Of a stretch of 64,000 nt of DNA, positions 1,673 through 40,563 are shown piece after piece. Position 1 is the stretch's first letter. Each line of letters opens with the position of its first letter. The notes beneath the pieces were generated by a model. That model did not search any database. It was not told where the DNA came from and saw only the letters and a program-made list of their open reading frames with translations. Location of the stretch: positions 1 through 64,000 of IMG/VR virus record IMGVR_UViG_3300025121_000011; one strand, written 5' to 3'. The translations under genes and the position numbers were made by a program.

Positions 1673-2247
1673 TTTCATCAAAGAATTTAGTTTACTTCAT
1701 TAATCCTCCTGAATATTTATCTGTATCGATTGCTTATACAGTTGCCGCAGATGTTCTGCCTATATTTGAAAAGCATTTTCCGAAGGATTTAAGACCAAGA
1801 AAAGCTGTTGAAGCGTCTAAGATGTATTTAGATGGATATGCGGTTGATTCTGCTGATGCTTATGATGCTGCTTATGCTGCTTATTCTGCTTATGCTGCTG
1901 CTTATGATGTTGCTGTCGCTGCTAATGCTGCTCATATTGTTTATGCTACTTATGCTGCTGCTGCTGCTAATGCTGCTGCTGCTGTTGTTAACGCTGCTAA
2001 TGCCACCGCTAATGCTGTTGCTGTTAATACTGCTTATGCCGTTTATTATGCAGTTTCTGCCTCTTCCGAAGAACACATCTTCAATCTTATTTTATCTCTG
2101 ATTCCTCAGATGATCGATTATGCTGTTGAAAATCAAATCAAGTTGTTCACCGGATCTGGAGACTTCTCGGAAATATTTGAGAAGTTAACCGATGAACAGA
2201 AGAAATCGGTGATATACAATATGGATGTAATCGGGAATTGGAAATGA
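1669..2247 (+). CDS. Imm5-like variable-core array protein, copy A4
   Basis: Same architecture, ATGA coupling. Confidence 0.85.
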   Translation: MISSKNLVYFINPPEYLSVSIAYTVAADVLPIFEKHFPKDLRPRKAVEASKMYLDGYAVDSADAYDAAYAAYSAYAAAYDVAVAANAAHIVYATYAAAAANAAAAVVNAANATANAVAVNTAYAVYYAVSASSEEHIFNLILSLIPQMIDYAVENQIKLFTGSGDFSEIFEKLTDEQKKSVIYNMDVIGNWK

Positions 2248-2837
2248 TTTCATCAAAAGATTTGGTTCTCTTCATTAATCCTCCTAAATATTTATCCGTA
2301 TTGATTGCTTATACAGTTGCCGAAGATGTTCTGCCTATATTTGAAAAACAGTATCCAAAGGATTTAAGACCGAGAAAAGCTGTTGAAGCGTCTAAGATGT
2401 ATTTAAATGGATATGCTGCTGATGCTAATGCTGCTTATGATGCTGCTAATGCTGCTTATGATGCTGCTAATGCTGCTTATGCTGCTTATGATGCTGCTAA
2501 TGCTGCTGCTTATGTTGCTTATTATGCTGCTAATGCTGCTGCTGCTTATGTTGCTTATTATGCTGTTTATGCTGTTAATGCTGCTAATGCTGCTTATTAT
2601 GCTGCTAGTGCCGTTTATTATGCAGCCAAAGCCTCTTCCGAAGAACACATCTTTAATCTTATTCTATCTCTGCTTCCTCAGATGATCGATTATGCTGTTG
2701 AAAATCAAATCAAGTTGTTCACCGGTTCTGGAGACTTCTCGGAAATATTTGAGATGTTAACTGATGAACAGAAGAAATCGGTGATATACAATATGGATAT
2801 GTTTTATTTAAGTAATAATAAATTACTTTTTAAGTAA
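2244..2837 (+). CDS. Imm5-like variable-core array protein, copy A5 (last of array, unique tail)
   Basis: Same architecture; similarity ends after YNMD. Confidence 0.85.
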   Translation: MISSKDLVLFINPPKYLSVLIAYTVAEDVLPIFEKQYPKDLRPRKAVEASKMYLNGYAADANAAYDAANAAYDAANAAYAAYDAANAAAYVAYYAANAAAAYVAYYAVYAVNAANAAYYAASAVYYAAKASSEEHIFNLILSLLPQMIDYAVENQIKLFTGSGDFSEIFEMLTDEQKKSVIYNMDMFYLSNNKLLFK

Positions 2838-6181: not shown

Positions 6182-6841
6182 GTGAAGTTATTTAACATTC
6201 CCATTAAATTTCATTGGTCATCTGTTTTTTTATTGCTGATGATTTTTTGTACTTCTAATTTTAGTATTATTTATGGATGTGTAATTGCGATAATGGTTTT
6301 GTTTTCCTTAATAGGGCATGAGCTGGCACACTGTTTGGTTGCTCGTGAATTTAATTATGATACCAAAGATATAACCATTATGGCTTTAGGCGGTGTAGCG
6401 CAAATAGCTCGCGCATCTAAAATGTCAGCTAAAGAAAATTTTTTAATGTCAATAGCGGGTCCAACATTTAACTTGTTTTGCGTAATAATACTTTTTATTC
6501 CTGCTATAATTTTAATTAATACGTTTTTAGGTTTAACAATATGTTACGCTATGGCGATCAACCTAATTATGTTTGGTTTCAATATGTTACCAGCTTATCC
6601 GTTAGATGGCAGTAGAGTATTTGGAGCTGTAATAGAATACTTTTTCGGAAAACAAAAAAGTATTTTGATGACAACCTGGATATCTTTAGCATCTGGAGTA
6701 TGTATTTGTTTTTTTGGAGGAATCAGTGGTTCTATATTTATTCTGATTATTGGCTTCATTGTTTGCTTTATTTCTTCTCCAGCACTTATAAGAAAGATAC
6801 AAAATACCTTTAGGTTTAAAAATGATAGATTCAATGTTTGA
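6182..6841 (+). CDS. Site-2 protease (M50) membrane metalloprotease
   Basis: HELAH, AGP..N, NMLPAYPLDG motifs; multiple TM segments. Confidence 0.92.
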   Translation: MKLFNIPIKFHWSSVFLLLMIFCTSNFSIIYGCVIAIMVLFSLIGHELAHCLVAREFNYDTKDITIMALGGVAQIARASKMSAKENFLMSIAGPTFNLFCVIILFIPAIILINTFLGLTICYAMAINLIMFGFNMLPAYPLDGSRVFGAVIEYFFGKQKSILMTTWISLASGVCICFFGGISGSIFILIIGFIVCFISSPALIRKIQNTFRFKNDRFNV

Positions 6842-7157
6842 AAGTATAGTAAAGAACTTAACAGATGAACCCGGTTTAACTTTAGTTGGAAGTCGCATCA
6901 CAAATAATGGTACGAAAGAATGTGTAACTTTTAAAATTAATGATTCTGATTTTTATATCTTCTTATTATGTAGTGAAGAATCAATTATTGGAAAATTATT
7001 TGAAAGACGCAAAACGGATGAGGTGTCTATTGTGGAAATTCAAGATCCTATAGATGTTTTGTTAGTTTGCAATATTATTACAGTCGAAAGATTGCTGGAT
7101 GTAATTTGTGATTTTAGAGTTAAACCAATTCTTTTTCATTTAAATTTATTTAATTAA
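6822..7157 (+). CDS. Hypothetical protein with C-terminal tag A
   Basis: ORF ends ..VERLLDVICDFRVKPILFHLNLFN. Confidence 0.65.
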   Translation: MIDSMFESIVKNLTDEPGLTLVGSRITNNGTKECVTFKINDSDFYIFLLCSEESIIGKLFERRKTDEVSIVEIQDPIDVLLVCNIITVERLLDVICDFRVKPILFHLNLFN

Positions 7158-7183
7158 AATATATAATCTACAGAGAGTTATCA

Positions 7184-7930
7184 ATGTCCATAGGTCTAAA
7201 AATAGATAATTTGCCAACTTTTAATATTGTTCCGGATTTTAATTTATTTGTGACGGGTGGATTCGTTCGAGATTCTCTTTTGCATATTGCATCAAAAGAT
7301 ATAGACATTGCTTGCGAAGCAAAAAGCTTTACAGAAATGTCCGATTGGGTAGAAAAAACTCATAGTAAAGTTTTCTTATCTAATCCTGAGTTCTTAACTA
7401 TTCGAGCCTTATATAAAAAAGGTGATGCACGAGATTATGTCTTGTGTCGAAAAGATGGAGCTTACAGTGATGGACGACATCCGGATGAAGTGAGTGCTGG
7501 TTCTATTCTGGATGATTTATCTCGACGGGACTTTACGATTGGAGCCATGGCAATAGACCTTAAAACTGGTCAGCTAATCGATCCTCACGGTGGGGCGTCT
7601 GATTTAAAACAACGCCTCATAAGAACCGTGGGGCGTGCTAGCGATAGGTTTGAAGAAGACCCGTTACGAATGTTGCGCGCTATTAGGTTTGCAATTACCA
7701 AGGGATTCTTTATTTCAGATGAAATTCTAAATATTTTATCAAATCCGGATTGGGCGGAGAAACTTTTGACAGTTTCTTCAGAAAGAATAAGAGAAGAAGT
7801 GTTTAAATGTTTTGTATTTGATACAGTTAGAAGTATGGAATTTTTATGTTCACATTGCTCTGCTGAGCTAAAAAATATAATTTTTGGCAATACAGGAATC
7901 TGGTTGAAGCCCACTATGGAGGCTCGATAA
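7184..7930 (+). CDS. cca: CCA-adding enzyme / poly(A) polymerase family nucleotidyltransferase (short form)
   Basis: GGFVRD, DIDI, DLSRRDFT, EDPLRMLRAIRF, ERIREE motifs. Confidence 0.9.
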   Translation: MSIGLKIDNLPTFNIVPDFNLFVTGGFVRDSLLHIASKDIDIACEAKSFTEMSDWVEKTHSKVFLSNPEFLTIRALYKKGDARDYVLCRKDGAYSDGRHPDEVSAGSILDDLSRRDFTIGAMAIDLKTGQLIDPHGGASDLKQRLIRTVGRASDRFEEDPLRMLRAIRFAITKGFFISDEILNILSNPDWAEKLLTVSSERIREEVFKCFVFDTVRSMEFLCSHCSAELKNIIFGNTGIWLKPTMEAR

Positions 7931-7933
7931 GAT

Positions 7934-8611
7934 TTGGACAAAAAAATACAATTAGAGATAGAATTGGAATCTTTGGCCACAATGTTTATGTGTGATGCTA
8001 TAATGATTGGTAACATAAAATGGACTATAGCAAAAAAACACTCTTTAGCCCTTGGAATGAGTAGCTTTTCTGAGGACATCAAATCTTTAAAAGAAGATTT
8101 TCTAATTAATAAAACGCCAAATATTCCACTTAAAAGTGATAACACAATAAACTGTAAATTGGCAGCAATGCTTATTGTAGCTTTGGCGGTCACAAATAGG
8201 CATTGGCATTCTTTTCTTGAAGAGATCGAAATCAAATACGGAAAGAATATATATTTACAAGTTATTTTAGAATTACTTGAGCTTAAAAAATATTATCAAT
8301 TAACAAAAAATGATAAAGGTTACTTAGTAAAATATTGGGCAGATCAAGAATATCTAGAAGAAGATTTTGTAAAAATGGTTTGCTTATCTTATTTTGATTC
8401 AGACTATTATTCGGCAAAGACGCTCTATATGCGAAAATTAGCAAAATCAAATAAGTTTGATCTACTTAGATTGTTTACAAAATCTTCAGCAAAAGGGATT
8501 CAACAAGTTCTTGTAGAATTGCTCCCCAAAGAAGATCTTATATATTTAATTAATTCGCCTCACGAAGAGATACAGAAAATATTGGAAAAAAAACTTAATA
8601 CGGAATCTTAA
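7934..8611 (+). CDS. Helical hypothetical protein with C-terminal motif B
   Basis: Ends VLVELLPKEDLIYLINSPHEEIQKILEKKL. Confidence 0.7.
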   Translation: MDKKIQLEIELESLATMFMCDAIMIGNIKWTIAKKHSLALGMSSFSEDIKSLKEDFLINKTPNIPLKSDNTINCKLAAMLIVALAVTNRHWHSFLEEIEIKYGKNIYLQVILELLELKKYYQLTKNDKGYLVKYWADQEYLEEDFVKMVCLSYFDSDYYSAKTLYMRKLAKSNKFDLLRLFTKSSAKGIQQVLVELLPKEDLIYLINSPHEEIQKILEKKLNTES

Positions 8612-8688
8612 ATAATTAAGATAAAAATAAAATTAACCAGGTAACAGAATAGTAGCCTATTCGATAAACCATCAAGCAAGGATTTAAT

Positions 8689-8934
8689 ATGGAACAGAAA
8701 CAAGTTGGCATTACTGATGAATATGGGTGCTTTGACATTAGCGATTTTGAACCCGGTGATAATATCATCGTAACTAATCCAAGAACCAGAGAGAGGATTA
8801 AGGGGATTGTTGTATCAACAAATAACCGGCCGGCATCTGTTGTGTTTGAGGATAAGAGTGGAGAAACCCATACGGTTAAGCTGAATAATGTGACCTTTCT
8901 TCAAGCTCCGGAGCGGGGGTGGTTATATCGATAA
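8689..8934 (+). CDS. Small beta-rich (SH3-like) hypothetical protein
   Basis: 81 aa; FEPGDNIIV...KGIVV pattern. Confidence 0.6.
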   Translation: MEQKQVGITDEYGCFDISDFEPGDNIIVTNPRTRERIKGIVVSTNNRPASVVFEDKSGETHTVKLNNVTFLQAPERGWLYR

Positions 8935-8947
8935 TACAGGAGTATAA

Positions 8948-9229
8948 TTGATTATAATAGAACATGAAGGCGCAGAATATACGTTAATAACTCGAAGTGG
9001 AAAGCTGCTTTGGGTTGATTCTAGAAATCAAATAGCAGATGCAAAATTATCAAATACATTGATAACACAAGCATCTAATATAACTGATGACGCATTGCAA
9101 AAGAAGTTAAAATCTGTTTTACCTAAACTCATAAAACAAGTTCCGGTTGAGACAAATATACATCGAATGCGTAAAAAGAAAAACGGAATCTCAATTAAAA
9201 TTAATTTAAAAAAAATGGAGGAAGAATGA
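8948..9229 (+). CDS. Hypothetical protein
   Basis: ORF with GGAG RBS, coupled to the next gene. Confidence 0.6.
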   Translation: MIIIEHEGAEYTLITRSGKLLWVDSRNQIADAKLSNTLITQASNITDDALQKKLKSVLPKLIKQVPVETNIHRMRKKKNGISIKINLKKMEEE

Positions 9230-9435
9230 TTTCAAATGCAGAAACGGTACGACAAGAATATACAGGATTAAAGGTACGACTTACCAAGGGAAGTCGACGC
9301 AAACAGCGATTAAGTAATCATCTAAAAATTACTATGGAAGGCGAGCGCACCGATGTTTCTATGCGGTTAACGATTCGTCAGGCGAGGGCACTTCGCGACT
9401 TTCTAGATAAGAATCTTGGAGAATCCGCTGAGTAA
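9226..9435 (+). CDS. Small basic hypothetical protein
   Basis: GGAGG RBS, ATGA overlap. Confidence 0.65.
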   Translation: MISNAETVRQEYTGLKVRLTKGSRRKQRLSNHLKITMEGERTDVSMRLTIRQARALRDFLDKNLGESAE

Positions 9436-9638
9436 CGTCTGATACATCAAGCAGTTGACCCGGCTGCTTAAAATTAAGCAAATAAAATAAAAATCGAAAG
9501 ATTTGTTGAAGCATTAGAAATGATTATGATAAACTCAAAGAAAATGTGGCGTCATAATCCAGTCTAATCTCACTTTATTTAAAATTAGCTGGAGAAGAAA
9601 TAAAAAGCTACTTCAGCTGCATTTACATCGGAGATTCA

Positions 9639-10319
9639 ATGTCAGACAAATATCCAAGATCCATGCACCTCCCATTTTCCCCTGGGACCACATCAGATGA
9701 TCGCATTATGAACGAAGACGACTTAGCTTTTTTGATTAGTCAGGAAGTGTTATTGACTGAAAAAATGGATGGTTCAAATGTGTGCTTTACAAAAGACGAG
9801 GTATTTTCACGCTCTCACAGCGGGCCTCCTTCTCATAAATCTTTTGATACGTTAAAATTATTGCACAAACAAAAGCAAAGCTTAATACCACCCAATATTT
9901 CAGTCTTTGCAGAGTGGACTTATGCCGTGCACTCAATACGATACACTCTTTTGCCATCTCATATATTTATCATAGGAATTAGAGATGATGAATTAAATTT
10001 TTGGTGGCCATGGGATGAAGTATCTTTGTTTGCAAAATCAAAACTCGAACTTCCCACGGTTCCAGTTATACTGCGCGGTATGTTTCCAGACAAAGAAGTT
10101 TTTGAAAAAATAATTGTGGATTTTTCAAAACTTTCTTCATTTTATGGACCAGATCGGGAAGGGTTGGTGGTTCGACATACCTCCGAGCTTTATGATGCAG
10201 ATAAAAAAATTCTTGGTCTTGGCAAAATGGTTCGTAAAAATCATGTTACAACCGATGTTCATTGGTCTCGACAACAAATTGAAGTACAGCCCACGCTAAA
10301 TTATTTTCAAAAAAAATGA
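9639..10319 (+). CDS. ATP-dependent RNA ligase family protein
   Basis: KYPRS.HLPFSPG N-terminus; motif I TEKMDGSN (KxDG); FAEW; REGLVVR; KMVR. Confidence 0.85.
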   Translation: MSDKYPRSMHLPFSPGTTSDDRIMNEDDLAFLISQEVLLTEKMDGSNVCFTKDEVFSRSHSGPPSHKSFDTLKLLHKQKQSLIPPNISVFAEWTYAVHSIRYTLLPSHIFIIGIRDDELNFWWPWDEVSLFAKSKLELPTVPVILRGMFPDKEVFEKIIVDFSKLSSFYGPDREGLVVRHTSELYDADKKILGLGKMVRKNHVTTDVHWSRQQIEVQPTLNYFQKK

Positions 10320-10405
10320 TCTAGGGGGTTAAAATTTTGAAATGTTTCGGTATATTTATATTCTAACAGGTATATGCTTAGAGCTATTACCACTAACACA
10401 AGGAA

Positions 10406-11320
10406 ATGCCCGCCATGTTTGGTACCTTATTCTTTAAGCCAAAAAGCGCTATTCGTGTCACCAATTTAAATGATGTTTATGTTGCTAATGGAGTTATAAT
10501 TGATCAAGCCGATAAAACTAAGATAATCAATCTTAAGAATATTAAGAGGCTGGCACATAGTAACAATGGTAGATTATTTGTTTTGGATTTTGTTGGTGAT
10601 GTTATGGCATCCCAAGCTGAGGCTTTATCGCAAGAAGTGAATGCGATACTGGCCGCTGGAAATCCAAATTTAGATCAGGTTCTAATTAGACTTGAAAGTC
10701 CCGGTGGAGCGGTCCATGTATATGGATATGCCTCTTCTCAATTGCAGAGGATTAGAAATGCGGGATATGACATGACAGTGGCTGTAGATAAAGTTGCGGC
10801 ATCAGGCGGATATATGATGGCTTGTATCGCACATAATATTATTTCTGCACCATATGCTATCGTTGGTTCTATAGGTGTGGTGTCGGAGTTTATGAATTTT
10901 AATACCTTGTTGGAATCAATTGGAATCAATTACAAACAGTATACTGCTGGAAAATATAAGCGAACAGTGGGTCCTTTAGGTCCAATTACCGTTGAGGCTG
11001 AAGCAAAGTTTAATAGCGACTTAGATCGTGTACATCGGTTGTTCAAGGATCATGTTAAAAAATTTCGAAATAGTTTGGATATAGATGAAATTGCAACCGG
11101 AGAGTATTGGTACGGTTTAGATGCAAAAGAGCGTGGACTAGTTGATCAGATTCTTCCTAGTGATGATTTTATTATTCAGGCTCTTTCCAAGAAGGAGGTT
11201 TTACATATCCAGTATATTCCGCATCGCAGTTTTGGTGATAAACTTAGATTGGGTTTTGTCAAAGCAATTAAAGATGTTGCACTTGAAATGATTAGTACTT
11301 ACATGCATTTAAGGCTTTAA
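10406..11320 (+). CDS. sohB: S49 family serine peptidase (SohB-like)
   Basis: RLESPGG, VDKVAASGGYMMAC, GSIGV, AGKYKRT, ATGEYW motifs. Confidence 0.9.
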   Translation: MPAMFGTLFFKPKSAIRVTNLNDVYVANGVIIDQADKTKIINLKNIKRLAHSNNGRLFVLDFVGDVMASQAEALSQEVNAILAAGNPNLDQVLIRLESPGGAVHVYGYASSQLQRIRNAGYDMTVAVDKVAASGGYMMACIAHNIISAPYAIVGSIGVVSEFMNFNTLLESIGINYKQYTAGKYKRTVGPLGPITVEAEAKFNSDLDRVHRLFKDHVKKFRNSLDIDEIATGEYWYGLDAKERGLVDQILPSDDFIIQALSKKEVLHIQYIPHRSFGDKLRLGFVKAIKDVALEMISTYMHLRL

Positions 11321-11321
11321 A

Positions 11322-11876
11322 ATGGTAAGAGCAGAGACTCGGAGGCAAAGATACCGTAGAAAGTTGGGTGATAAAATTCTTTTGCCAGCAAGCTTTACTA
11401 CGGTTTGTTTTAACTTTGATGATAATCTTGCTTTTTTACTCCGTACGGCTGCGTGTTTTGGGTTTAGTCACATTAATGTGATCGGGTCTATTCCAGCTAG
11501 AAGCAAAATAGATGCCAAGTCTGGTAGTCTTTTTGATTTTATAGAGATACGACAATATCCAAATCCCCACGCTTTTATGGAGATGGTGCGAGCAGAAAAG
11601 ATTTATTTGGTATCCGCAGATTTATCACCGTCAGCTGATAGTTTATATGAGTATAAGTTTAAATTTGATATTCATACGTCCATTGTGATTGGAAACGAGA
11701 CAACCGGAATCCCTGTTGAAATTTCAATCAATAGTGATGAGGTTTTTATTCCGATGCCTGGACCTGGATATTGTCTTAACGCCAGTCAGAGTGGTACTGT
11801 TTTTGCCGCTGAATATAGTCGACAGCTATTTATGCATCGTCCTATACTTAAAAAAGAATTTTCACAGGTGATATAG
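11322..11876 (+). CDS. SpoU/TrmH family RNA 2'-O-methyltransferase
   Basis: N.A.LLRTAACFG, IVIGNETTGI, FIPMPG...CLNAS SPOUT motifs. Confidence 0.88.
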   Translation: MVRAETRRQRYRRKLGDKILLPASFTTVCFNFDDNLAFLLRTAACFGFSHINVIGSIPARSKIDAKSGSLFDFIEIRQYPNPHAFMEMVRAEKIYLVSADLSPSADSLYEYKFKFDIHTSIVIGNETTGIPVEISINSDEVFIPMPGPGYCLNASQSGTVFAAEYSRQLFMHRPILKKEFSQVI

Positions 11877-11878
11877 AT

Positions 11879-12073
11879 ATGAAGTTAACACAGAAAATTA
11901 AGCAAGGTAAGTGTAAAATTCAGAAAGCTGCTATTAGTGGTTGTGATGTTATCATTGGATGCCTGGGGTGGGCAATGATATTATCTGGATTATATGTGAC
12001 CCTTGTGATTCGAGCCATGTCACAAACAGGAGAGTCAATTGAAGAACTTAAGCAAACGGAAGGAGACGAATGA
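11879..12073 (+). CDS. Small membrane protein
   Basis: 64 aa with one hydrophobic helix; fits operon spacing. Confidence 0.5.
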   Translation: MKLTQKIKQGKCKIQKAAISGCDVIIGCLGWAMILSGLYVTLVIRAMSQTGESIEELKQTEGDE

Positions 12074-12860
12074 TTTTTTATCAATCTTGTATAAGAATGA
12101 TTTAAAAAAATCTAATGGATATGTTAAGGTCAGTGATCCGTTGTTTCGATGTGCAATAAATTATATTAATAGTTTGAGTTTAATACAGTTAAAGAGATTA
12201 GTTTCTGATCCCATTTGGAACGACTATAAAAGTTATAGATATTTGTGTAAATATGATGATAATATATATAAAGACATTATTAATAATGAATCAGTTTACA
12301 AAACTTGGTATGGATCATTAATTTCGCGAGTCATCAAACAGTTGATTTGTTTAGATAATGATTTTTCTCTTTTTTTAGCTAAGCATGCTTCTGGTTTGAT
12401 ACTTAATGTCTTATTAAGGAATTCTTATGGAGAGCCAATTAGAATTGGGTGTCAGAGAGCTTTGAAGTCAAAGGATCCTAGAGTTAGATTGACGGCTGCT
12501 AAGATAGGATCAATATGCATCGCGAAAAAATTGCAAAATGATCCAATTGGAATAGTTAGGGCGGCAGCTATCAGAAGGATAGGTGTTAATTATTGTTATA
12601 AGCAACATTTAAATGATCCTAATCGTAAAATAAAAGCAGAAGCGATTTTGGTCGCATCGTTAAAGGATATTGATTATAATTCTATACTTGGTAGTTTAAT
12701 GGAGAAGAACACCCGAAATTGGATAGATGATCAGATTCTTAGAAGTTTATTATCAAAAATGGATCCAAAAGAAATAGTTTATTATTTAAATTTAGTTGAT
12801 AAAGATAAATTAACCGCAGGTGTTTTAAAGCATAAGTTGTCACAAGTAAAGTTTCATTAA
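12039..12860 (+). CDS. HEAT-like repeat protein with C-terminal motif B
   Basis: Repeats LKSKDPRVRLTAA / LQNDPIGIVRAAAI / LNDPNRKIKAEAI. Confidence 0.7.
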   Translation: MKNLSKRKETNDFLSILYKNDLKKSNGYVKVSDPLFRCAINYINSLSLIQLKRLVSDPIWNDYKSYRYLCKYDDNIYKDIINNESVYKTWYGSLISRVIKQLICLDNDFSLFLAKHASGLILNVLLRNSYGEPIRIGCQRALKSKDPRVRLTAAKIGSICIAKKLQNDPIGIVRAAAIRRIGVNYCYKQHLNDPNRKIKAEAILVASLKDIDYNSILGSLMEKNTRNWIDDQILRSLLSKMDPKEIVYYLNLVDKDKLTAGVLKHKLSQVKFH

Positions 12861-12884
12861 TATGTTGATGAGTTAAATGATATT

Positions 12885-13142
12885 GTGAGGTTTAAAATGA
12901 ATAATGAAGTGGCTGTCATAAGATATGATAATCATAGTCTATTTACTGTGGATCTCTATATTGATGGGAAGTTTTCTAAAAATATTGGAGGAGGTTATCC
13001 GGGATCTAAGGCTTGCGAGATAGATGCCAAAGGTTGTTGGGGTAGAGATATAGAGGTTCGTAATACAAGATATACTAATATTGATGATGTAGAACAATAT
13101 TTGGCTTTGCTCAAATTAAAAGGTAATTATTGTAGGCTATGA
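12885..13142 (+). CDS. Hypothetical protein
   Basis: ORF coupled to the next gene by ATGA. Confidence 0.6.
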   Translation: MRFKMNNEVAVIRYDNHSLFTVDLYIDGKFSKNIGGGYPGSKACEIDAKGCWGRDIEVRNTRYTNIDDVEQYLALLKLKGNYCRL

Positions 13143-13405
13143 ACGATAAGCATCTTTTGGAGCTTGGTATCTTTAAGCAAAAAGGCGATGGAAGGTTTAA
13201 ATTGGTAGGTACAAGTATTGAATATTATCCACAGGGACGGTCGATGTATAATCGAAAAAATATATGGACTGTATCTCAATATAAATGGTGGAAACGTGGG
13301 AGAGATAGATTGGTACGTCCAATATCTATTGATCAAGTTTTAAAAGAATTGCCATATGAATTAAAGATGTTGTTTATTTTTAACATTACGTTATTTAGGG
13401 ATTAA
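13139..13405 (+). CDS. Hypothetical protein with C-terminal tag A
   Basis: Ends ISIDQVLKELPYELKMLFIFNITLFRD. Confidence 0.7.
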   Translation: MNDKHLLELGIFKQKGDGRFKLVGTSIEYYPQGRSMYNRKNIWTVSQYKWWKRGRDRLVRPISIDQVLKELPYELKMLFIFNITLFRD

Positions 13406-13454
13406 AAATATTGATTTTAGATATTCAAATTTCTTAAGAAAGAATAAATATTTA

Positions 13455-13816
13455 GGGGGCGAAATAGATTTCGACAGGGTGGATTAAATTAATGGTGCAA
13501 GTCGTCTACGATAACAATAGACGTTAAAGTTGTTATAAAAAAATCAATTGCTGAATTAAAACTCGCAGCTTAATCTTTAAGATTAAGTCCAGGTTTCTAA
13601 CCACCTGGTTTCCAAGGTTAGATAAGCGGTTGGCCACGCTGACAGAAAACAAATGCCAAAATGGTTACCCTCATTGTATGAGGTGGAATTCCTTAGCTCA
13701 TTTAAGGAATGGTTGGAAAAAAGAGATACTTTGCTTATTTAGAGAAATAAGACAAGCTTGTAAATGACCAGATGTTGAAGCTGCTTTGGACGAGGGTGCG
13801 ATTCCCTCCGCCTCCA
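13455..13816 (+). ncRNA. ssrA: tmRNA
   Basis: GGGGGCG...GATTTCGAC 5' end pairs with CGCCTCC-A (G3.U70 Ala determinant); T-arm GAGGG-TGCGATT-CCCTC; pk1 CGTCTA/TAGACG plus ATAACAA/TTGTTAT; tag 13550-13573 AELKLAA*. Confidence 0.95.
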
Positions 13817-13855
13817 CTATTTAACGGTGTCTTGTAAAGGAGGGTTTTGAGAATA

Positions 13856-14473
13856 ATGGATTTAAAAAAGTTAGTTAATGATGCTAGAATATCAGCAGTT
13901 AAAGCAAATAATGAAAGACTGAGACTGAAAGAGGAGAAAGCGGAAGAGCTTAAAAGAAAATTAGATTCTTTTTCAAATGAATTTATATCAAATAGACTCC
14001 CAAAATTATTGAGGGATGCCATAGATAATAGCAGAACATATATTTATGTTTGCTTTCTGGATAATAGGCGCTATATAATTCCATATAACATAGAACATAT
14101 AAGATACCTAGCTCAAGCAGTTGAAAAAGAAACGGGATTAGTATGTGCTGTATCTGAAGATATAGTAGAAGAAAATTCTACTTTAAATCAACTCATTCTT
14201 AATATCGATCTTCTCTCTTTTAAATCTCCCGATGAATGGGTGGATTCCAGCCTTAATGCTTGTGCTTTTTTTGACACTTATCATCACGGAGAGAAATCCT
14301 GGTATGTAGCGATTTCAGATGAAGAGTTTAAACAGTTACTGGCAGATGAGGATCAACTTAGGAAGGGGAAATGGACTGATTTGGCTAATAAGATTTTTGA
14401 TCGTCCTCATTTAGAGCCTCCCAATCTTTCTCATTGTAAGCTTTCTAACAGTGTTCTAATTGCGGTGTGTTGA
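13856..14473 (+). CDS. Hypothetical protein
   Basis: ~205-aa ORF; coiled-coil N-terminus. Confidence 0.65.
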   Translation: MDLKKLVNDARISAVKANNERLRLKEEKAEELKRKLDSFSNEFISNRLPKLLRDAIDNSRTYIYVCFLDNRRYIIPYNIEHIRYLAQAVEKETGLVCAVSEDIVEENSTLNQLILNIDLLSFKSPDEWVDSSLNACAFFDTYHHGEKSWYVAISDEEFKQLLADEDQLRKGKWTDLANKIFDRPHLEPPNLSHCKLSNSVLIAVC

Positions 14474-14501
14474 TGAGCAGATTTAACTCTAAGGTGAAGT
14501 A

Positions 14502-14732
14502 ATGAAAGTTAAAGCTCTAATAATGAAGTTGCAAAAGCTTGATCAAAATTTGGATGTCTATATCATGGAAGATGACGATGATTATGGATTGGTAGGTAGT
14601 TGTATTGAGCAGTTGTTTGTAACAGAGCATTCTGAAAAAAGAACGGCTCCTGTTGATGAAGATGATGTTGCAAATGGCGAGATTACTCTAAGTCCAAAGG
14701 ATAAGTTGTTTAGAGCTGTCTGGATTTTGTGA
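14502..14732 (+). CDS. Small acidic phage protein (MKVK.LI.KLQ.LD type)
   Basis: N-terminal pattern common in small phage proteins. Confidence 0.65.
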   Translation: MKVKALIMKLQKLDQNLDVYIMEDDDDYGLVGSCIEQLFVTEHSEKRTAPVDEDDVANGEITLSPKDKLFRAVWIL

Positions 14733-15061
14733 GGACCCTTAAAATGATAGAAATGGAAAAATCTCTTGAAGAGGAATTGCTTGATTTTGGATTTAAAAGA
14801 GTAATATCCATTAAAAATGTAACATTCACAAGGATACCTTTGAAATATAAGTGTTATACGTATAAGAATGACCAAATGTCTATTTGCATTTTTATATATA
14901 TAAGTTTAAAAAATATATGGCATAATCATGCGGCATGGGTATATGAGGAATATGATGAAGGCCAATTATTAAAGGCTCTATGTGGAGAATATCAAGATAT
15001 AGAATATTATCTTCCATTAGAATTAAGAGAAAGATTGTTGTATCATTTGTATGAATTGTAA
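14729..15061 (+). CDS. Hypothetical protein with C-terminal tag A
   Basis: Ends EYQDIEYYLPLELRERLLYHLYEL. Confidence 0.65.
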   Translation: MRTLKMIEMEKSLEEELLDFGFKRVISIKNVTFTRIPLKYKCYTYKNDQMSICIFIYISLKNIWHNHAAWVYEEYDEGQLLKALCGEYQDIEYYLPLELRERLLYHLYEL

Positions 15062-15326
15062 TAAATATTTATCACGAAGAATGGTGTGATAGATTTATTG
15101 TATAAATGTAATACTTATCAAGTTACCGAAGCATATTCGTGTTGAGATGTTATATTATTCAGATATATTACTCGGGCTTTCTAAATAACAATATATGTCA
15201 TTTTTTTCTTAGAAGGTGGACAAAAAAATGACATAATCACTGGATGCAGTATTTCTATGCAGATTAAAGAATGTAGAAATTTTTGCTAATGGTAGTAGGA
15301 TTTTTCATCAGTTATATAGGAGTGTT

Positions 15327-15986
15327 ATGGATAGAAAAGTACATTGGGTTTCTAGATCAAAAGATAAAAAGACAGGAGAGGTTTTGGTTTCTTATTCTCC
15401 AAAAGAAACTTGTCCAAAAACTTGTTCTCTTAAAAAAGGAGGGTGTTACGCATGGGGTCTTTATTATTTAAAATCGTTGGGAGATAAATTATCCTCTGGA
15501 AAACTGGTTCCAAGAACATTAGATATTGCTATTAAGAATATCTTGCCTACAACAAAAATAGCGCGTCATAGGGTGGCTGGAGATGTTGTCGGGGATGTAG
15601 CTGCTACAATACAAGAATGTCGGGATCTAGATTCGGCGGGATTAATTAATATAGGATATACTCACAATTGGAGAGCAGCAGAATCTCAACCCTTAAAGCA
15701 TTACTTCAGAGCATCATGTCAATCAGTTGAAGAGGTATTAATCGCTAGAGAAATGGGTTGGGCAACAACTTTGATTGTCTCACAAGGTGTAGATAAAAAA
15801 ACCAAACTTCCTAATGGTGAATTTTCAGTAAAATGTCCGGCTAAACATGATATCGCTGGAAAGAAAGATGTTACCTGTAATACCTGCACATTATGTCGAG
15901 TGGATGGTAAAACGGAAAAGACAACAGTTATGTTTGAAGTGCATGGAAATAATTCAACTATTCAGAAGGCTAATGGAAAAATTTGA
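15327..15986 (+). CDS. Cys-rich phage protein, possible Fe-S / radical-SAM-like fold
   Basis: TCPKTCSLKKGGCYA, RHRVAGD, YTHNW, CPA...CNTCTLC. Confidence 0.65.
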   Translation: MDRKVHWVSRSKDKKTGEVLVSYSPKETCPKTCSLKKGGCYAWGLYYLKSLGDKLSSGKLVPRTLDIAIKNILPTTKIARHRVAGDVVGDVAATIQECRDLDSAGLINIGYTHNWRAAESQPLKHYFRASCQSVEEVLIAREMGWATTLIVSQGVDKKTKLPNGEFSVKCPAKHDIAGKKDVTCNTCTLCRVDGKTEKTTVMFEVHGNNSTIQKANGKI

Positions 15987-16007
15987 TAAAATTATAGGAG
16001 TAAAGTA

Positions 16008-16253
16008 ATGGGAGATTGGATTGGAAATAGAGTCGAAGAGGCTTTAGGAGCACTTCGTGGGGCTATGTATGATTTAAAAGTAGAAAACAATAAGGCTCAT
16101 GTTGTACTGGATTCATACGATATTCCGCAGTATACGGATGGCGAACTAAGTCGCCCACTCACATTGTCAGAAAGAATACAACTTAATCATGAAAAAGATC
16201 AAAATTATATTTTAAAATTATGTGAACAATTATTCATCGCAAGTAACGTTTAA
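16008..16253 (+). CDS. Hypothetical protein
   Basis: AGGAG RBS. Confidence 0.65.
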   Translation: MGDWIGNRVEEALGALRGAMYDLKVENNKAHVVLDSYDIPQYTDGELSRPLTLSERIQLNHEKDQNYILKLCEQLFIASNV

Positions 16254-16282
16254 CTAAATAAAAAAATAGAAAAAGTAACAAT

Positions 16283-16633
16283 ATGTTTGGAGAGTATATG
16301 AAAAAAAATCCTGAAGCAGGAGAATTGGTTTGCCTTAGTTCTAATGATAAATTTGCTTATCCGCATGGAGTAGCTTTATACTTAGATGATGGTAAAGTGG
16401 TTTTACCATCTTATTTGAAGGGGTGGGTTGTAACCGATATTGATGGTTTAGAAAATTATAGCACATTTGGCCGACATAATATCAGGAAAACACATTTCAA
16501 TGAATATGGAGAGATATGTGGATATGATTATTTAGCATATGATGCAGGTATTCCAACCGAACTTTGTCTTAGAAGAACAAATGGAGAATGGATTATTTCA
16601 AATGAGTTTAAACTTCCGACGTGGGTTCAGTAG
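16283..16633 (+). CDS. Hypothetical protein
   Basis: ORF; alternative start at 16298 has a GGAG RBS. Confidence 0.6.
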   Translation: MFGEYMKKNPEAGELVCLSSNDKFAYPHGVALYLDDGKVVLPSYLKGWVVTDIDGLENYSTFGRHNIRKTHFNEYGEICGYDYLAYDAGIPTELCLRRTNGEWIISNEFKLPTWVQ

Positions 16634-17531
16634 TTTTAAACAGATCATCAAAGAAACTCATTCCTCTTTCATCTATAATAGAATTCATAACTTCTGAATA
16701 TTTTTTAGAAACATTTTGTTGAATGGTGTGAATAACTTTATCAAAGTCTGGTAAGATCTGGCCTTCTGTTGCCCACTGGATGCCCATAATTGCGATAGAT
16801 AAACCAATATCTATCCAAAATAAAGATCCGGCAGATACAAGTTCTATAAAAGCCAAAACAGCATCTTTTACTGCATCTATAGAATTTGCAATTAATCCGA
16901 TAAATTCTTTAATAAAACCACGAGAAGCTTTTGATAACTGATCAACAGAGATTGTTTTTTCAGGGTCCTCACGAGTTTGTTCTGTGATGGAATTTAGTAT
17001 TTTTGGATCTAATGCATCTTTCCAAGAAATTCCTAAAGTGTCAGAAACACCTAAAACATTAGATAATTCTTTGGAGCCGTAATATAGGTTTTTTAATGCA
17101 AAAGCAATACTGAAGAATACACCAATAAAAGGAATGGCGCGCAAAGTAGCCCCAGCCAAAGCTTGCTTTATTAAGATTGGATTATGTTCAATTTGAGATA
17201 GATGTTTCAATGTTGCGGTTTTAGTTTCACTTGATATCATTTGATCAACATATTTGCCAGCCTCTTTTAAGGCATTTGGATCCGCACTTCTAATTTTATT
17301 TCCAGCATCGGCTAATTGACCGATTCCTACAGAAAAGTATTGCATGGCTCTGGTGTTTAAAGTTGGCTCATAAGGTTTTGCAACTTCTGAAAATGTGTGT
17401 CGCCATTGTTCAAATTCTTTATTTAGATTTGCATCTAGTGCTAAAATAATTAATTGACGCGTTTCCAAAGAGGCGTCTATATAATTATAGTGGTCTAAAA
17501 TTTTAGAAAGTTGAAGAAGTTGTTTATTCAT
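16608..17531 (-). CDS. Putative virion/ejected protein with N-terminal leader motif and hydrophobic helices
   Basis: MNKQLLQLSKILDHYNYIDASLETRQLI leader; LRAIPFIGVFFSIAFAL and FWIDIGLSIAIMGI helices; GAGG RBS. Confidence 0.7.
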   Translation of the reverse strand: MNKQLLQLSKILDHYNYIDASLETRQLIILALDANLNKEFEQWRHTFSEVAKPYEPTLNTRAMQYFSVGIGQLADAGNKIRSADPNALKEAGKYVDQMISSETKTATLKHLSQIEHNPILIKQALAGATLRAIPFIGVFFSIAFALKNLYYGSKELSNVLGVSDTLGISWKDALDPKILNSITEQTREDPEKTISVDQLSKASRGFIKEFIGLIANSIDAVKDAVLAFIELVSAGSLFWIDIGLSIAIMGIQWATEGQILPDFDKVIHTIQQNVSKKYSEVMNSIIDERGMSFFDDLFKTTEPTSEV

Positions 17532-17556
17532 TGTTGCCTCATTTTCTTAGTTTAAA

Positions 17557-17563
17557 ATTAGTA
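17557..17563 (-). promoter_or_regulatory. TACTAAT candidate late-promoter motif
   Basis: 25 nt upstream of the 17531 start. Confidence 0.5.
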
Positions 17564-17574
17564 GAGGATATATT

Positions 17575-18663
17575 ATGAAAGTAGTAAAAAGTAGCGAAGA
17601 AGTGGATCAGCTTATTTTACAATTAACATCAAAAGAGTTTTTGGGTTTACAACCTATTTTGGCAGGAGGGTTTGTAGCTTGGTTATATCAATTGGAGACT
17701 AATAGTCAAGAACAAATACCAGAGATTATAACTGCATATAAGAATATGAAGAAAATAAGAGAAACGGCATCCATTGCTGGCGTAAATTTAAATATTATTA
17801 CAACAGTAAAATATGATTTTTTATCTAATTATCCATATTATGATATAGATGCTTGGTTTAAAAATACAAATGATGTTTGGGATATTAATAATCCAGAGTC
17901 TGTTTTGATAACCGCAGAAGGAGAACGAGATCTCTTAAAAGAGATGGCAATTAAAATAGGCTTTCAAGATGTAAAGCATCAGTCTCTCTGGGCAAATACA
18001 TTATCTAGGCGTATCCGCTCTGATAATCATGAAGATAAATTGCAAATTATAATTCGACCATATTCTTCTACAGAAGAGATATTATCATCTTTTGATTTAG
18101 ACGGATGTAAGATTGGTTGGGAAAATGGATTTTTTCATCTTACAGATGAGTTTTTAGAGTCTATCCAAAATAGAAGAATAATTATAAATGATAATAATTG
18201 GAAATCTTCAGAACATTTTCAAAGAGTACAAACGGCGCTTAGAGCTTTCAAGTATCACAAAAGAATGGGATGGCCACTTTCTAAAGACTCTTTAAATAAG
18301 ATTTTTGAAGTTTATCAAGAAGTGTTCTCTCATAAAAAATATAAAGTTTCTGTTGTAAAAACAACAAGTCTAATCACCAAGGTTAGTACCGGGATTTCAT
18401 CAGTTTTGTCAAAAATATTACCAAAAATGTCGCCACATATGGCTCATCAGATTTCGATTTATGGACAGAATAAAAGCGTAGATGTGTTAAAGGATTTTCA
18501 GATGAAACTGTTGGATTCTTTTGAGATAATTGTTGTTCAGCCGGATTTCGAAAGTAGCATGCTTCCGTATTTTATTGGTACAGGTAATTATAAGATAGAA
18601 AAATTAGTTTTGGCTATGATGGAGTGTGAATCTAACAATAATTCTAGTACGTCAAAAATATGA
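17575..18663 (+). CDS. Divergent nucleotidyltransferase-fold protein with C-terminal motif B
   Basis: ILAGGF, DIDAWF, LQII, ILSSFDL..CKIG, R..KY..R pattern. Confidence 0.7.
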   Translation: MKVVKSSEEVDQLILQLTSKEFLGLQPILAGGFVAWLYQLETNSQEQIPEIITAYKNMKKIRETASIAGVNLNIITTVKYDFLSNYPYYDIDAWFKNTNDVWDINNPESVLITAEGERDLLKEMAIKIGFQDVKHQSLWANTLSRRIRSDNHEDKLQIIIRPYSSTEEILSSFDLDGCKIGWENGFFHLTDEFLESIQNRRIIINDNNWKSSEHFQRVQTALRAFKYHKRMGWPLSKDSLNKIFEVYQEVFSHKKYKVSVVKTTSLITKVSTGISSVLSKILPKMSPHMAHQISIYGQNKSVDVLKDFQMKLLDSFEIIVVQPDFESSMLPYFIGTGNYKIEKLVLAMMECESNNNSSTSKI

Positions 18664-18740
18664 ATGTAGAGAATTCTTCTATATTTAAATTTATTTAGAT
18701 GATGTATTTGCATTCATAATTTATATTTTATTATAATACG

Positions 18741-19337
18741 GTGAGTATTTGTATGTTACCAGATTCATTGGTTTATTTTATTCAACCTTCATCATACTTA
18801 GCTGTATTAATTGCTTATACGGTAGCTATGGATGTTTTGCCAATATTTGAAACGCAGAGACCAACAGATGATAAACTTAGGCAAATCATTAGTGTATGTA
18901 AGATGTATTTAAAATATATCTTAATTGATGTTAGGTCGCTGAATGATGATATTAAACGCTTATCTCGTGAACTTAAGTCCTACAATCCTGCTATGGACAG
19001 TTATGAATATATTTATATTGTTAACACAGCTGTTAGTGTTTTTGCAACTTTAAATTCTGCTATTAGATTTAAGAAAACTGGTATACTTATTAATCAGATA
19101 GATGCTTCTCTTAATAATGCTGCTGATGTTGTTTATTATGCAGCTCTCGCCTCTTCCGAAGAACACATCTTCAATTTGATTCTATCTCTGTTTCCTCAGA
19201 TGATCAATTATGCTGTTGAAAATCAAATCAAGTTGTTCACCGGACCTGGAGATTTCTCAGAGATATTTGAGATGTTAACCGATGAACAGAAGAAGCTGGT
19301 GATATATAATATGGATGTAATTGGAAATTGGAAATGA
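18741..19337 (+). CDS. Imm5-like array paralog B1 with non-repetitive core
   Basis: Diverged N-module (VLIAYTVAMDVLPIFE); unique core; near-identical C-module from ~19130. Confidence 0.8.
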   Translation: MSICMLPDSLVYFIQPSSYLAVLIAYTVAMDVLPIFETQRPTDDKLRQIISVCKMYLKYILIDVRSLNDDIKRLSRELKSYNPAMDSYEYIYIVNTAVSVFATLNSAIRFKKTGILINQIDASLNNAADVVYYAALASSEEHIFNLILSLFPQMINYAVENQIKLFTGPGDFSEIFEMLTDEQKKLVIYNMDVIGNWK

Positions 19338-19951
19338 TTTCATCAAAAGATTTGGTTTTATTCATTAATCCTCCTAAATATTTATCCGTATTAATTGCTT
19401 ATACAGTTGCCGCAGATGTTCTGCCTATATTTGAAAAGCATTTTCCGAAGGATTTGAGACCGAGAAAAGCTGTTGAAGTTGCTAAGATGTATTTGGAGGG
19501 ATATGCGGTTGTTGCTGCTGATGTTGATGCTGCTGCTTATGATGCTGCTGATGCTGCTTATGATGCTGCTAATGCTGCTTATGATGCTGCTAATGCTGCT
19601 TATGCTGCTTATACTAATGTTGTTGTTGTTAATGCCGCTGTTTATGCTGTTTATTATGCCGCTGCTCATGCTGCTTATGCTGCTCATGCTTCTTATGCTG
19701 CTACTTATGCTGCTTCTTATGCTGCTTCTTATGCTGCTTCTGCTGCTTGTTATGCAGCCAAAGCCTCTTCCGAAGAACACATCTTCAACCTGATTTTATC
19801 TCTGCTTCCTCAGATGATCGATTATGCTGTTGAAAATCAAATTAAGTTATTCACAGGACCCGGAGATTTCTCAGGAATATTTGAGATGTTAACCGATGAG
19901 CAGAAGAAGCTGGTGATATTTAATATGGATGTAATTGGGAATTGGAAATGA
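19334..19951 (+). CDS. Imm5-like variable-core array protein, copy B2
   Basis: Same modules as array A; ATGA coupling. Confidence 0.85.
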   Translation: MISSKDLVLFINPPKYLSVLIAYTVAADVLPIFEKHFPKDLRPRKAVEVAKMYLEGYAVVAADVDAAAYDAADAAYDAANAAYDAANAAYAAYTNVVVVNAAVYAVYYAAAHAAYAAHASYAATYAASYAASYAASAACYAAKASSEEHIFNLILSLLPQMIDYAVENQIKLFTGPGDFSGIFEMLTDEQKKLVIFNMDVIGNWK

Positions 19952-20511
19952 TTTCATCAAGAGATTTAGTTTACTTCATTAATCCTCCAAAATATTTATC
20001 CGTATTAATTGCTTATACAGTTGCCACAGATGTTCTGCCTATATTTGAAAAGCAGCATTCGAAGGATTTAAGACCAAGAAAAGCTGTTGAAGCGTCTAAG
20101 ATGTATTTGGATGGATATGCGGTTGATGCTGTTTATGCTGCTCATGCTTCTGCTGCTTATGCTGCTTATGTCACTGCTGATACTGTTTATGCTGCTTATG
20201 CTGCTAATGCTGCTGCTAATGCTGCTGCTGCTTATGCTGCTTATGCCGCTTATGTTGTTGTTGATTATGCTGCTTATGCTGTTTATTATGCAGCTCTTGC
20301 CTCTTCCGAAGAACACATCTTCAACCTGATTTTATCTCTGCTTCCTCAGATGATCAATTATGCTGTTGAAAATCAAATCAAGTTGTTTACGGGATCTGGA
20401 GATTTCTCAGAGATATTTGAGATATTAACCGATGAACAGAAGAAACCAGTGATATACAATATGGATGTAATTGGGAGTTTAAAGAGTATAATTTTAGAAA
20501 AGGAGAAATGA
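19948..20511 (+). CDS. Imm5-like variable-core array protein, copy B3
   Basis: Same modules; unique tail after MDVIGS. Confidence 0.85.
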   Translation: MISSRDLVYFINPPKYLSVLIAYTVATDVLPIFEKQHSKDLRPRKAVEASKMYLDGYAVDAVYAAHASAAYAAYVTADTVYAAYAANAAANAAAAYAAYAAYVVVDYAAYAVYYAALASSEEHIFNLILSLLPQMINYAVENQIKLFTGSGDFSEIFEILTDEQKKPVIYNMDVIGSLKSIILEKEK

Positions 20512-39664: not shown

Positions 39665-39672
39665 AGGAATTT

Positions 39673-39930: not shown

Positions 39931-39931
39931 G

Positions 39932-40165: not shown

Positions 40166-40219
40166 TAAATTTTAATTAATCATTTATTTGAAAAAAAGAT
40201 TTTTAGAGGTACATATATA

Positions 40220-40552: not shown

Positions 40553-40563
40553 ATTTAATAGAT

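What the first reader, a model, noticed from the sequence alone, without database searches (positions are those of the whole stretch)
6822..20511. C-terminal tag A shared by the array proteins and unrelated small proteins
Seen: terminal ~25 aa align as h..hh..LP/T.E.K/R..hhF/Y-N/H-h..h in the array (FSEIFEMLTDEQKKLVIYNMDVI), 13139 (IDQVLKELPYELKMLFIFNITLF), 14729 (YQDIEYYLPLELRERLLYHLYEL) and, more loosely, 6822 (VERLLDVICDFRVKPILFHLNLF). The upstream parts are unrelated. Inference: a portable docking, localisation or degradation tag that delivers many effectors to one partner, in the way an F-box-like adaptor does. This would make the variable array a set of substrate-recognition subunits.
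Basis: partly seen in the sequence, partly recalled or inferred. Interest (0 to 1): 0.7.

Follow-up and report, generated by a model that had tools for sequence, protein, structure and literature searches.

The report
Shared C-terminal module of huge-phage gene families
About twenty proteins of this 335-kb groundwater phage end in the same short, strongly conserved C-terminal module. It is a real, previously undescribed signature of huge-phage gene families and sits on two unrelated protein bodies, but nothing yet shows that it is a docking or F-box-like tag.

Summary

- **What holds up.** A profile built only from proteins of other metagenomes scores the array proteins at 1e-8 to 1e-9 and the 13139 protein at 4e-6. 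The 14729 protein is borderline (0.07). The 6822 protein fails: only its last 8 residues match.
- **It is wider than reported.** Outside the window seven more small proteins and four more array copies carry the tail, giving 20 confident carriers among about 401 ORFs.
- **Position.** In a 1.84-billion-protein library, 74 proteins match and almost all matches end 0-2 residues from the C-terminus.
- **The module.** It spans about 34-38 residues: a strand, two short helices and a terminal F-[N/H]-L-D-[L/I]-[F/L]. It sits on two unrelated bodies:
  - Imm5-like all-helical proteins, whose predicted fold resembles the deaminase immunity protein SsdAI. They form tandem arrays with a hypervariable middle.
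  - Small alpha/beta proteins of 63-147 aa, which form tandem clusters in related huge phages.
- **Selection.** The tail is under purifying selection (dN/dS 0.15, dS 0.37).
- **No known match.** No Pfam, PHROG, PDB or F-box match exists.
- **Structure.** In both AlphaFold models the tail is confidently modelled and follows the body without a low-confidence linker, so it does not look like a tethered peptide.
- **Function.** Its role as a shared handle on diversifying binders is inferred, not shown.

The parts
25..537 (+). Array copy (Imm5-like plus tail). Its N-terminus lies at the other end of the circularly closed contig. Tail at 427-522.
528..1091 (+). Array copy. Tail at 981-1076.
1082..1672 (+). 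Array copy. Tail at 1562-1660.
1663..2247 (+). Array copy. Tail at 2137-2232.
2238..2837 (+). Array copy. Tail at 2709-2804, followed by a 10-residue extension.
6822..7157 (+). Only its last 8 residues (ILFHLNLF, 7128-7151) resemble the tail. Membership not supported.
13139..13405 (+). 88-aa small alpha/beta protein and confirmed tail carrier. Module at 13304-13399 (residues 56-87). AlphaFold model: one helix, five strands, then the tail helices.
14729..15061 (+). 110-aa ORFan, a borderline tail carrier (YLPLELRERLLYHL at 15008-15049). It lies just upstream of the DUF7227 gene, as a tail-bearing gene does in the related phage G001.
18741..19337 (+). Array copy with a divergent, non-Ala/Tyr middle. 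Tail at 19227-19322.
19328..19951 (+). Array copy with an Ala/Tyr-rich hypervariable middle. Tail at 19841-19936.
19942..20511 (+). Array copy that reaches the Pfam Imm5_like cut-off (25.0 bits). AlphaFold pLDDT 84.7. Residues 1-138 match SsdAI (Z 10.2). Tail at 20377-20472, then a 12-residue extension.

Best explanation
Tag A is the conserved C-terminal subdomain of an undescribed gene family found, in what was examined, only in huge-phage or phage-like contigs.

SHOWN
- The module spans about 34-38 residues: a short strand, two short helices and a terminal F/Y-[N/H]-L-D-[L/I]-[F/L], usually followed by 0-2 residues.
- It sits on two unrelated bodies: (i) Imm5-like all-alpha proteins in tandem arrays with a hypervariable Ala/Tyr-rich middle; (ii) small alpha/beta proteins of 63-147 aa that also form tandem clusters.
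- The tail sequence is kept by purifying selection while the bodies diverge.
- The carrier genes occupy variable, non-syntenic slots of the genome.

INFERRED
- The bodies are diversifying binding modules. For the arrays they are most likely immunity-type inhibitors of host or competitor toxins, such as deaminases.
- The tail provides one constant face, through which all of them meet the same invariant partner or site in the infected cell.
- That face would be a folded surface patch built on the conserved polar residues (E12, K/Q23, N/H29, D31 of the profile), not a flexible peptide.
- The partner is unknown. It is not an F-box/SCF system.
For: Homology and significance:
- Leave-one-out and external-profile E-values.
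- Clean shuffled and reversed controls.
- hhalign 97.8% probability, E 1e-12, over 38 C-terminal columns.

Independent recurrence and position:
- 78 hits at E<=1e-3 in 1.84e9 proteins, of which 4 are long repeat proteins that I count as false.
- Of the 64 that are not this phage's own, 55 end within 2 residues of the C-terminus. Fisher-combined p is about 1e-44, with the caveat that the proteins are related.

Two bodies:
- Array model: all-alpha, pLDDT 84.7, pTM 0.84. Residues 1-138 align to SsdAI, chain 7jtu_B, at Z 10.2 against 5.4 for the first unrelated row.
- Pfam Imm5/Imm5_like hits and transitive homology to PF21805 members.
- 13139 model: alpha plus five strands plus tail helices, pLDDT 87.2.

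Portability:
- Most Imm5_like relatives end differently.

Constraint:
- Tail dN/dS 0.15 at dS 0.37, pre-tail 0.07, middle 2.44.
- The same polar positions are conserved in both subgroups.

Multigene behaviour in other phages:
- L009 has 6 Imm5-like-plus-tail copies.
- G001 has 13-16 small carriers within 16 kb. L010, L011 and L013 have 2-3 adjacent carriers each.

Variable slots:
- G001 is syntenic with this phage over about 100 kb but lacks the array and the 13139 gene at the matching places.

Virus restriction:
- No confirmed match in one genome each of 185,579 prokaryote species.
Against: - No partner was found and no interaction of any kind was tested successfully.
- Both models place the tail confidently with no low-confidence linker, so its conservation could be purely structural.
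- The conserved hydrophobic residues (V14, F15, L18, F28, L30, L/F33) are what a packing element would keep.
- The SsdAI match (Z 10.2) lies in the range where helical proteins can match by arrangement alone.
- The dN/dS of the middle rests on an uncertain alignment of low-complexity sequence.
- The function of every carrier is unknown, and the host is unknown.
Confidence: 0.45

Rival explanations
1. Structural element only. The tail is a folding nucleus or C-terminal cap that packs on whatever body precedes it. It is conserved for stability and has no common partner. Each protein acts alone through its variable part.
For: - Both AlphaFold models place the tail confidently, with pLDDT blocks of about 83-93, and it continues directly from a strand of the body.
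- Half of the conserved positions are hydrophobic.
- No partner was found.
Against: - One and the same 30-residue sequence would have to pack on an all-alpha body and on a beta-sheet body.
- Polar positions (E12, K/Q23, N/H29, D31) are as conserved as the hydrophobic ones in both subgroups.
- Most Imm5_like proteins do without it.
Confidence: 0.3
2. Oligomerisation module. Two helical hairpins pair, so tail carriers form homo- or hetero-oligomers with each other, mixing array proteins and small proteins.
For: - A helix-turn-helix with a conserved hydrophobic face is a common dimerisation device (established knowledge).
- About 20 carriers coexist in one phage.
Against: No supporting evidence.
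Confidence: 0.1
3. Sorting or turnover signal. The C-terminus directs the proteins to a machine, for example for packaging into the virion and ejection, export, or regulated proteolysis.
For: - The position is at the extreme C-terminus.
- The phage encodes S49 and M50 peptidases nearby.
- Carriers sit in accessory regions of the genome.
Against: - The tail is predicted to be folded, not an exposed peptide.
- It does not end like an ssrA-type degron (...LAA). Most tails end in a hydrophobic residue followed by R, K or V.
- Two orthologues carry 34-41 further residues after it.
Confidence: 0.1
4. Sliding-clamp-binding mimic. The terminal [N/H]-L-D-L-F copies the bacterial beta-clamp motif QL[SD]LF, so the carriers ride on the host clamp.
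For: - The resemblance is recalled from memory and is a lead only.
- The phage has a DnaE-type polymerase and no detectable clamp of its own, so it may depend on the host clamp.
Against: - The defining Q is replaced by N or H in 52 of 53 sequences.
- The phage's own DnaE shows no such motif, and no protein of the phage has QL[SD]LF.
- The tail is predicted to be structured.
Confidence: 0.04

Closest known systems
Imm5 / Imm5_like immunity proteins (PF14423, PF21805) and homogeneous polyimmunity loci of polymorphic toxin systems (Zhang et al. 2012, PMC3482391)
   Same: - The array bodies hit these Pfam families.
- They are homologous to many PF21805 proteins.
- Their model matches the deaminase immunity protein SsdAI.
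- They are arranged as tandem paralogues, like polyimmunity loci (for the concept).
   Different: - They are encoded by phages.
- They carry an extra C-terminal module of about 50 residues that most family members lack and that no Pfam model covers.
- No toxin partner is known, and immunity activity is untested.
Poxvirus ankyrin-repeat proteins with a C-terminal PRANC/F-box-like domain (known from the literature, not tested here)
   Same: A large virus carries arrays of helical-repeat proteins with variable bodies and a short conserved helical module at the extreme C-terminus.
   Different: - No sequence match to F-box, F-box-like or PRANC models.
- Bacteria have no SCF ligase.
- The module here also ends small alpha/beta proteins.
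- The resemblance is one of architecture only.
SspB-type protease adaptors with a C-terminal docking peptide (known from the literature)
   Same: A substrate-binding body plus a conserved extreme C-terminal element that contacts one machine.
   Different: In SspB the docking peptide sits on a long flexible linker. Here the tail follows the body directly and is modelled as folded. No link to any protease was found.

Membership tests
F-box / F-box-like / PRANC | Sequence match to the roughly 40-50-residue three-helix F-box profile (PF00646, PF12937, PF09372) | tested here: not met
   No such hit at E<=1 on the array proteins, 13139, 14729 or 6822 or on six further carriers. None at E<=0.01 on the 31 small proteins. 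The conserved part is only about 26-34 residues.
F-box / F-box-like / PRANC | Binds Skp1 of an SCF ubiquitin ligase | not testable with these tools
   Bacteria, the hosts of tailed phages, have no SCF ligase (established knowledge). This phage's host is unknown.
Imm5_like (PF21805), array body only | Match to the family profile at or above its curated cut-off | tested here: inconclusive
   19942-20511 scores 25.0 bits, equal to the cut-off. The other two window copies score 15.5 and 17.1. Homologues found at E 1e-13 to 1e-20 carry PF21805.
Imm5_like (PF21805), array body only | All-alpha immunity-protein fold | tested here: met
   AlphaFold model is all-alpha with pTM 0.84. Its best solved match is SsdAI (7jtu_B): Z 10.2, 131 residues aligned over model residues 1-138. 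Caveat: background is high for helical folds.
Imm5_like (PF21805), array body only | Neutralises a cognate toxin | not testable with these tools
   No toxin partner is known. This needs co-expression assays.
Polyimmunity locus | Tandem paralogous immunity-type genes | tested here: met
   The phage has runs of 5, 3 and 3 adjacent copies with overlapping stop and start codons. L009 has 5 adjacent copies plus 1 more.
Bacterial beta-clamp-binding motif QL[SD]LF | Q at the first position, then L-[S/D]-L-F | tested here: not met
   Position 29 is N or H in 52 of 53 external sequences. L-D-[L/I]-[F/L] is kept.
Bacterial beta-clamp-binding motif QL[SD]LF | Binds the clamp | not tested
ssrA-type C-terminal degron | Unstructured C-terminus ending in ...LAA or similar | tested here: not met
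   The tails end in [L/I][F/L] followed mostly by R, K or V and are modelled as helices.
New tail family (this report) | Significant match to the tail profile ending within about 15 residues of the C-terminus | tested here: met
   Met by the array copies and 13139. Inconclusive for 14729 (E 0.03-0.07). Not met by 6822.

The most novel reading that the evidence does not exclude
The tail is a common docking handle. It hands many different host targets, captured by the hypervariable Imm5-like surfaces and the variable small domains, to one host or phage machine such as a protease, a clamp or a compartment. That would be a phage counterpart of the poxvirus ankyrin/PRANC adaptor arrays.
Probability: 0.12. 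Interest if true: 0.85.

Novelty: new variant of a known kind. Interest (0 to 1): 0.55.

Why it matters
- **Scale.** About one ORF in twenty of a 335-kb phage shares one C-terminal module that no domain library describes. The same module marks tandem gene clusters in other huge phages.
- **Evolutionary pattern.** Constant ends on fast-diverging bodies are typical of virus-host conflict genes.
- **Possible counter-defence role.** The array bodies look like immunity proteins against deaminase-type toxins. These arrays may therefore be a phage counter-defence repertoire.
- **Practical use.** The tail gives a simple sequence handle, a 34-column profile, for finding such genes in metagenomes. It also gives a defined element to delete, swap or use as bait.
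- **If it is only structural.** It is still a useful new family definition.

Tried and rejected
- **Homodimer test.** Complex prediction on the 13139 protein returned no answer, so it counts neither for nor against binding.
- **Fold searches of the 13139 model.** Nothing was significant in PDB Foldseek, the VIA wide search (best Z 4.6, HIV Vif, below the noise level), AFDB clusters, BFVD or the ESM Atlas. An F-box/WD row at TM 0.46 in the Atlas is not meaningful.
- **Other structure and feature searches.** Foldseek of the array model against PDB found nothing. Sequence profiles against PDB gave no real hit. Protein Atlas feature searches all scored below 0.9.
- **GenBank phages.** tblastn with an array protein and a small carrier found no match.
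- **Family libraries.** PHROGs and Pfam have no family for the small carriers.
- **Homologues of 14729 and 6822.** Only identical copies in near-identical contigs turned up, so relatives could not settle their membership.
- **Diversity-generating retroelement** as the source of the hypervariable middle: no reverse transcriptase in the genome.
- **Clamp lead.** No gp45-like or DnaN clamp, and no clamp motif in the phage DnaE or its proteome.
- **Collection scans.** A degenerate DNA pattern found 4 IMG/VR contigs, of which only one (G001) was real.
- **RNA runs.** None was listed that holds the stretch.
- **Looser look-alikes** at 7934-8611, 12039-12860, genome 213297 and genome 334711: not significant.
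Full report
**Setting.** The window is the first 64 kb of a 335,169-bp IMG/VR virus record. GC content is about 33% and almost all genes lie on the + strand. The sample type is probably groundwater, judging from the study-linked runs. The record's 'direct terminal repeat' is an exact 127-bp overlap that lies inside a conserved part of an array gene. It therefore marks circular closure of the assembly within a repeated gene, not physical genome ends.

**Checking the observation.**
It already found non-seed proteins elsewhere in the genome: 108906-109157 (E 0.003), 222570-223043 (0.013) and 311362-311805 (0.027).
- Reading the C-termini of all ORFs showed the same ending on many small proteins.
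- In leave-one-out tests against the phage's 401 non-overlapping ORFs, a profile of the small proteins alone found the array at E=1e-9. Several small proteins were found at 1e-5 to 1e-7.
- With the phage's own profile, twenty shuffled proteomes gave no hit below 0.01, and the reversed proteome's best was 0.45.
- A profile built from 59 sequences of other metagenomes, with none from this phage, scored as follows:
  - array copies 1e-8 to 1e-9
  - 222570 at 5e-10, 257123 at 2e-8, 327358 at 1.5e-7, 108906 at 9e-7
  - 13139 at 4e-6, 206242 at 7e-5, 311362 at 2e-4, 256712 at 4e-4, 257550 at 0.018
  - 14729 at 0.07 and 189305 at 0.9. Shuffles of the proteome reached 0.04-0.055 in 2 of 20 runs, so 14729 is borderline.
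- 6822 matches only in its last eight residues.
- Both 14729 and 6822 are ORFans, so relatives could not settle their membership.
- One point favours 14729. In the related phage G001 a tail-bearing 121-aa gene sits just upstream of the DUF7227 homologue, as 14729 does here.
- Verdict: the array and 13139 are confirmed, 14729 is borderline and 6822 is unsupported.

**Extent.** The phage has:
- 11 array copies plus a divergent one at 327358;
- a 49-aa array remnant;
- 8 small carriers;
- 2 borderline cases.

**Recurrence elsewhere and position.**
- The 34-column tail profile (A1) was scored against 1.84 billion representative proteins and gave 78 hits at E<=1e-3.
- Four are long repeat proteins with many weak stretches, which I count as false.
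- Of the other 74, ten are this phage's own proteins. Of the remaining 64, 55 end 0-2 residues from the C-terminus and only one ends more than 15 residues away.
- The Fisher-combined probability under uniform placement is about 1e-44. The proteins are related, so this number overstates independence.
- About half of these external carriers are Imm5-like proteins of 150-245 aa. The other half are proteins under 150 aa, most of them small carriers and a few truncated Imm5-like fragments.
- Two orthologues of 222570 carry 34-41 residues after the module.

**What the module is.**
- Profile-profile comparison of the small-protein alignment (A3) with the array alignment (A2) gives 97.8% probability and E 1e-12 over 38 columns, at the C-termini only.
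- The consensus is h-S-F-E-E-V-F-x-x-L-[S/P]-x-E-x-[K/Q]-E-x-h-h-[F/Y/W]-[N/H]-L-D-[L/I]-[F/L].
- The most informative positions are [F/Y/W]28, [N/H]29, L30 and D31. The same polar positions are conserved in both subgroups.
- No Pfam, PHROG or PDB sequence profile covers it.

**The two bodies.**
- *Array proteins.* They hit Pfam Imm5 and Imm5_like weakly, with one copy exactly at the cut-off. They are clearly homologous to many PF21805 proteins.
- Only a subfamily of those relatives carries the tail. The rest end in other sequences.
- The AlphaFold model (pLDDT 84.7, pTM 0.84) is all-alpha. The tail forms two short helices (155-161, 164-172) flanked by single bridge residues.
- The best solved match is chain B of 7JTU: Z 10.2, residues 1-138, next unrelated row 5.4. 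That chain is SsdAI, the immunity protein of the DYW-like ssDNA deaminase toxin SsdA.
- This fits the reported link of Imm5 with DYW deaminase toxins. Helical folds do have a high background at this Z.
- The match stops before the C-terminal 50 residues, so the tail region is an addition to the immunity-type body.
- *Small proteins.* Their parts upstream of the tail show almost no BLAST similarity to each other. They do align to a common pattern.
- The model of the 13139 protein, built with 31 family sequences (pLDDT 87.2, all five models 83.8-87.2), has one helix, five strands and then the tail helices.
- Fold searches found nothing significant.
- For the small proteins, the tail therefore looks like the conserved end of one fast-diverging alpha/beta family rather than an appended tag. 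Its presence on the Imm5-like subfamily is what shows portability.

**Evolutionary behaviour.**
- Nine array paralogues gave these Nei-Gojobori dN/dS values:

| Region | dN/dS |
|---|---|
| Constant N-terminus | 0.39 |
| Middle | 2.44 |
| Pre-tail | 0.07 |
| Tail | 0.15 (dS 0.37) |

- The tail is thus kept by selection on the protein, not by recent gene conversion. The value for the middle is only suggestive, because low-complexity Ala/Tyr sequence aligns poorly.
- There is no reverse transcriptase, so a diversity-generating retroelement is unlikely.
- Carriers also form tandem clusters elsewhere:
  - six Imm5-like-plus-tail genes in a 53-kb phage-like contig;
  - two or three adjacent small carriers in three contigs, one of 422 kb;
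  - 13-16 small carriers within 16 kb of IMG/VR contig G001.
- G001 is collinear with this phage over about 100 kb at 25-83% protein identity. It lacks the array and the 13139 gene at the matching positions, so the carriers occupy variable slots.
- A scan of one genome for each of 185,579 prokaryote species found no confirmed relative of the small-family tail. All contexts I inspected look viral.

**Mechanism.**
- *Shown:* a constant, constrained C-terminal subdomain on diversifying bodies of two kinds, in phage accessory regions.
- *Inferred:* the bodies are binding modules. For the arrays they are most likely inhibitors of deaminase-type or other toxins. The tail supplies one common face.
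- I rate a shared-partner role at about 0.45 and a purely structural role at about 0.3. Oligomerisation, sorting or turnover, and clamp mimicry are less likely.
- Against a tethered peptide tag: both models place the tail with confidence, directly after a strand, with no linker.
- Against the F-box reading: no profile match, and bacteria have no SCF system.
- The clamp-motif resemblance of [N/H]-L-D-L-F comes from memory only. The defining Q is absent and the phage's own DnaE lacks any such motif.

**Verdict.** The 'docking, degradation or F-box-like' part is untested. The module is an undescribed family signature attached to a known kind of protein, the Imm5-like polyimmunity-style array.

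Noticed in passing
window 13455-13819 (+): A phage-encoded tmRNA lies directly downstream of the 13139 gene. ARAGORN predicts the tag peptide VKVVIKKSIAELKLAA. Rfam RF00023 scores 97.3 bits over the full-length model.
   Followed up: partly
window 1-127 and genome 335043-335169: The record's 'direct terminal repeat' is an exact 127-bp overlap inside the conserved N-terminal part of an array gene. It differs by only 3-13 bases from the other copies. It shows assembly closure within a repeated gene, not true genome ends.
   Followed up: yes
window 19328-20511 and the other array copies: The Ala/Tyr/Asn/Asp/Val-rich middle of the array proteins varies in length and sequence, with an apparent dN/dS of 2.4 (alignment caveat). 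No reverse transcriptase is present in the genome.
   Followed up: partly
window 7934-8611, 12039-12860, 17575-18663, 25004-26089, 32678-33409: A different recurring C-terminal pattern appears in larger proteins (L-P-x-x-h ... K-K-h-h-E-K/R-h). One of them gives weak HEAT-repeat hits. It is not related to tag A by the profile.
   Followed up: no
window 6182-11876: A cluster of RNA-repair/modification and protease genes: M50 peptidase, a nucleotidyltransferase with the PolyA_pol head domain (CCA-adding type), RNA ligase, S49 peptidase and a SpoU methylase. DUF7227 lies at 15327-15986.
   Followed up: partly
genome 67116-71333; G001 33701-34735 and 39411-42065: The phage has a DnaE-type polymerase III alpha of 1405 aa and no detectable clamp. 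In the relative G001 the homologue appears as two ORFs about 4.7 kb apart, which suggests an inserted element.
   Followed up: no
genome 295320-295607: Remnants of a further array copy lie just upstream of the third array. A 49-aa ORF still ends in the tail, and fragments with stop codons are present.
   Followed up: no
genome about 258000-290000: This stretch has many short ORFs on both strands and protein compositions unlike the rest of the genome. It may be RNA-gene-rich or foreign DNA.
   Followed up: no
genome 222570-223043; P0159: This is the only carrier lineage in which the module is not terminal. It is followed by 34-41 further residues.
   Followed up: no
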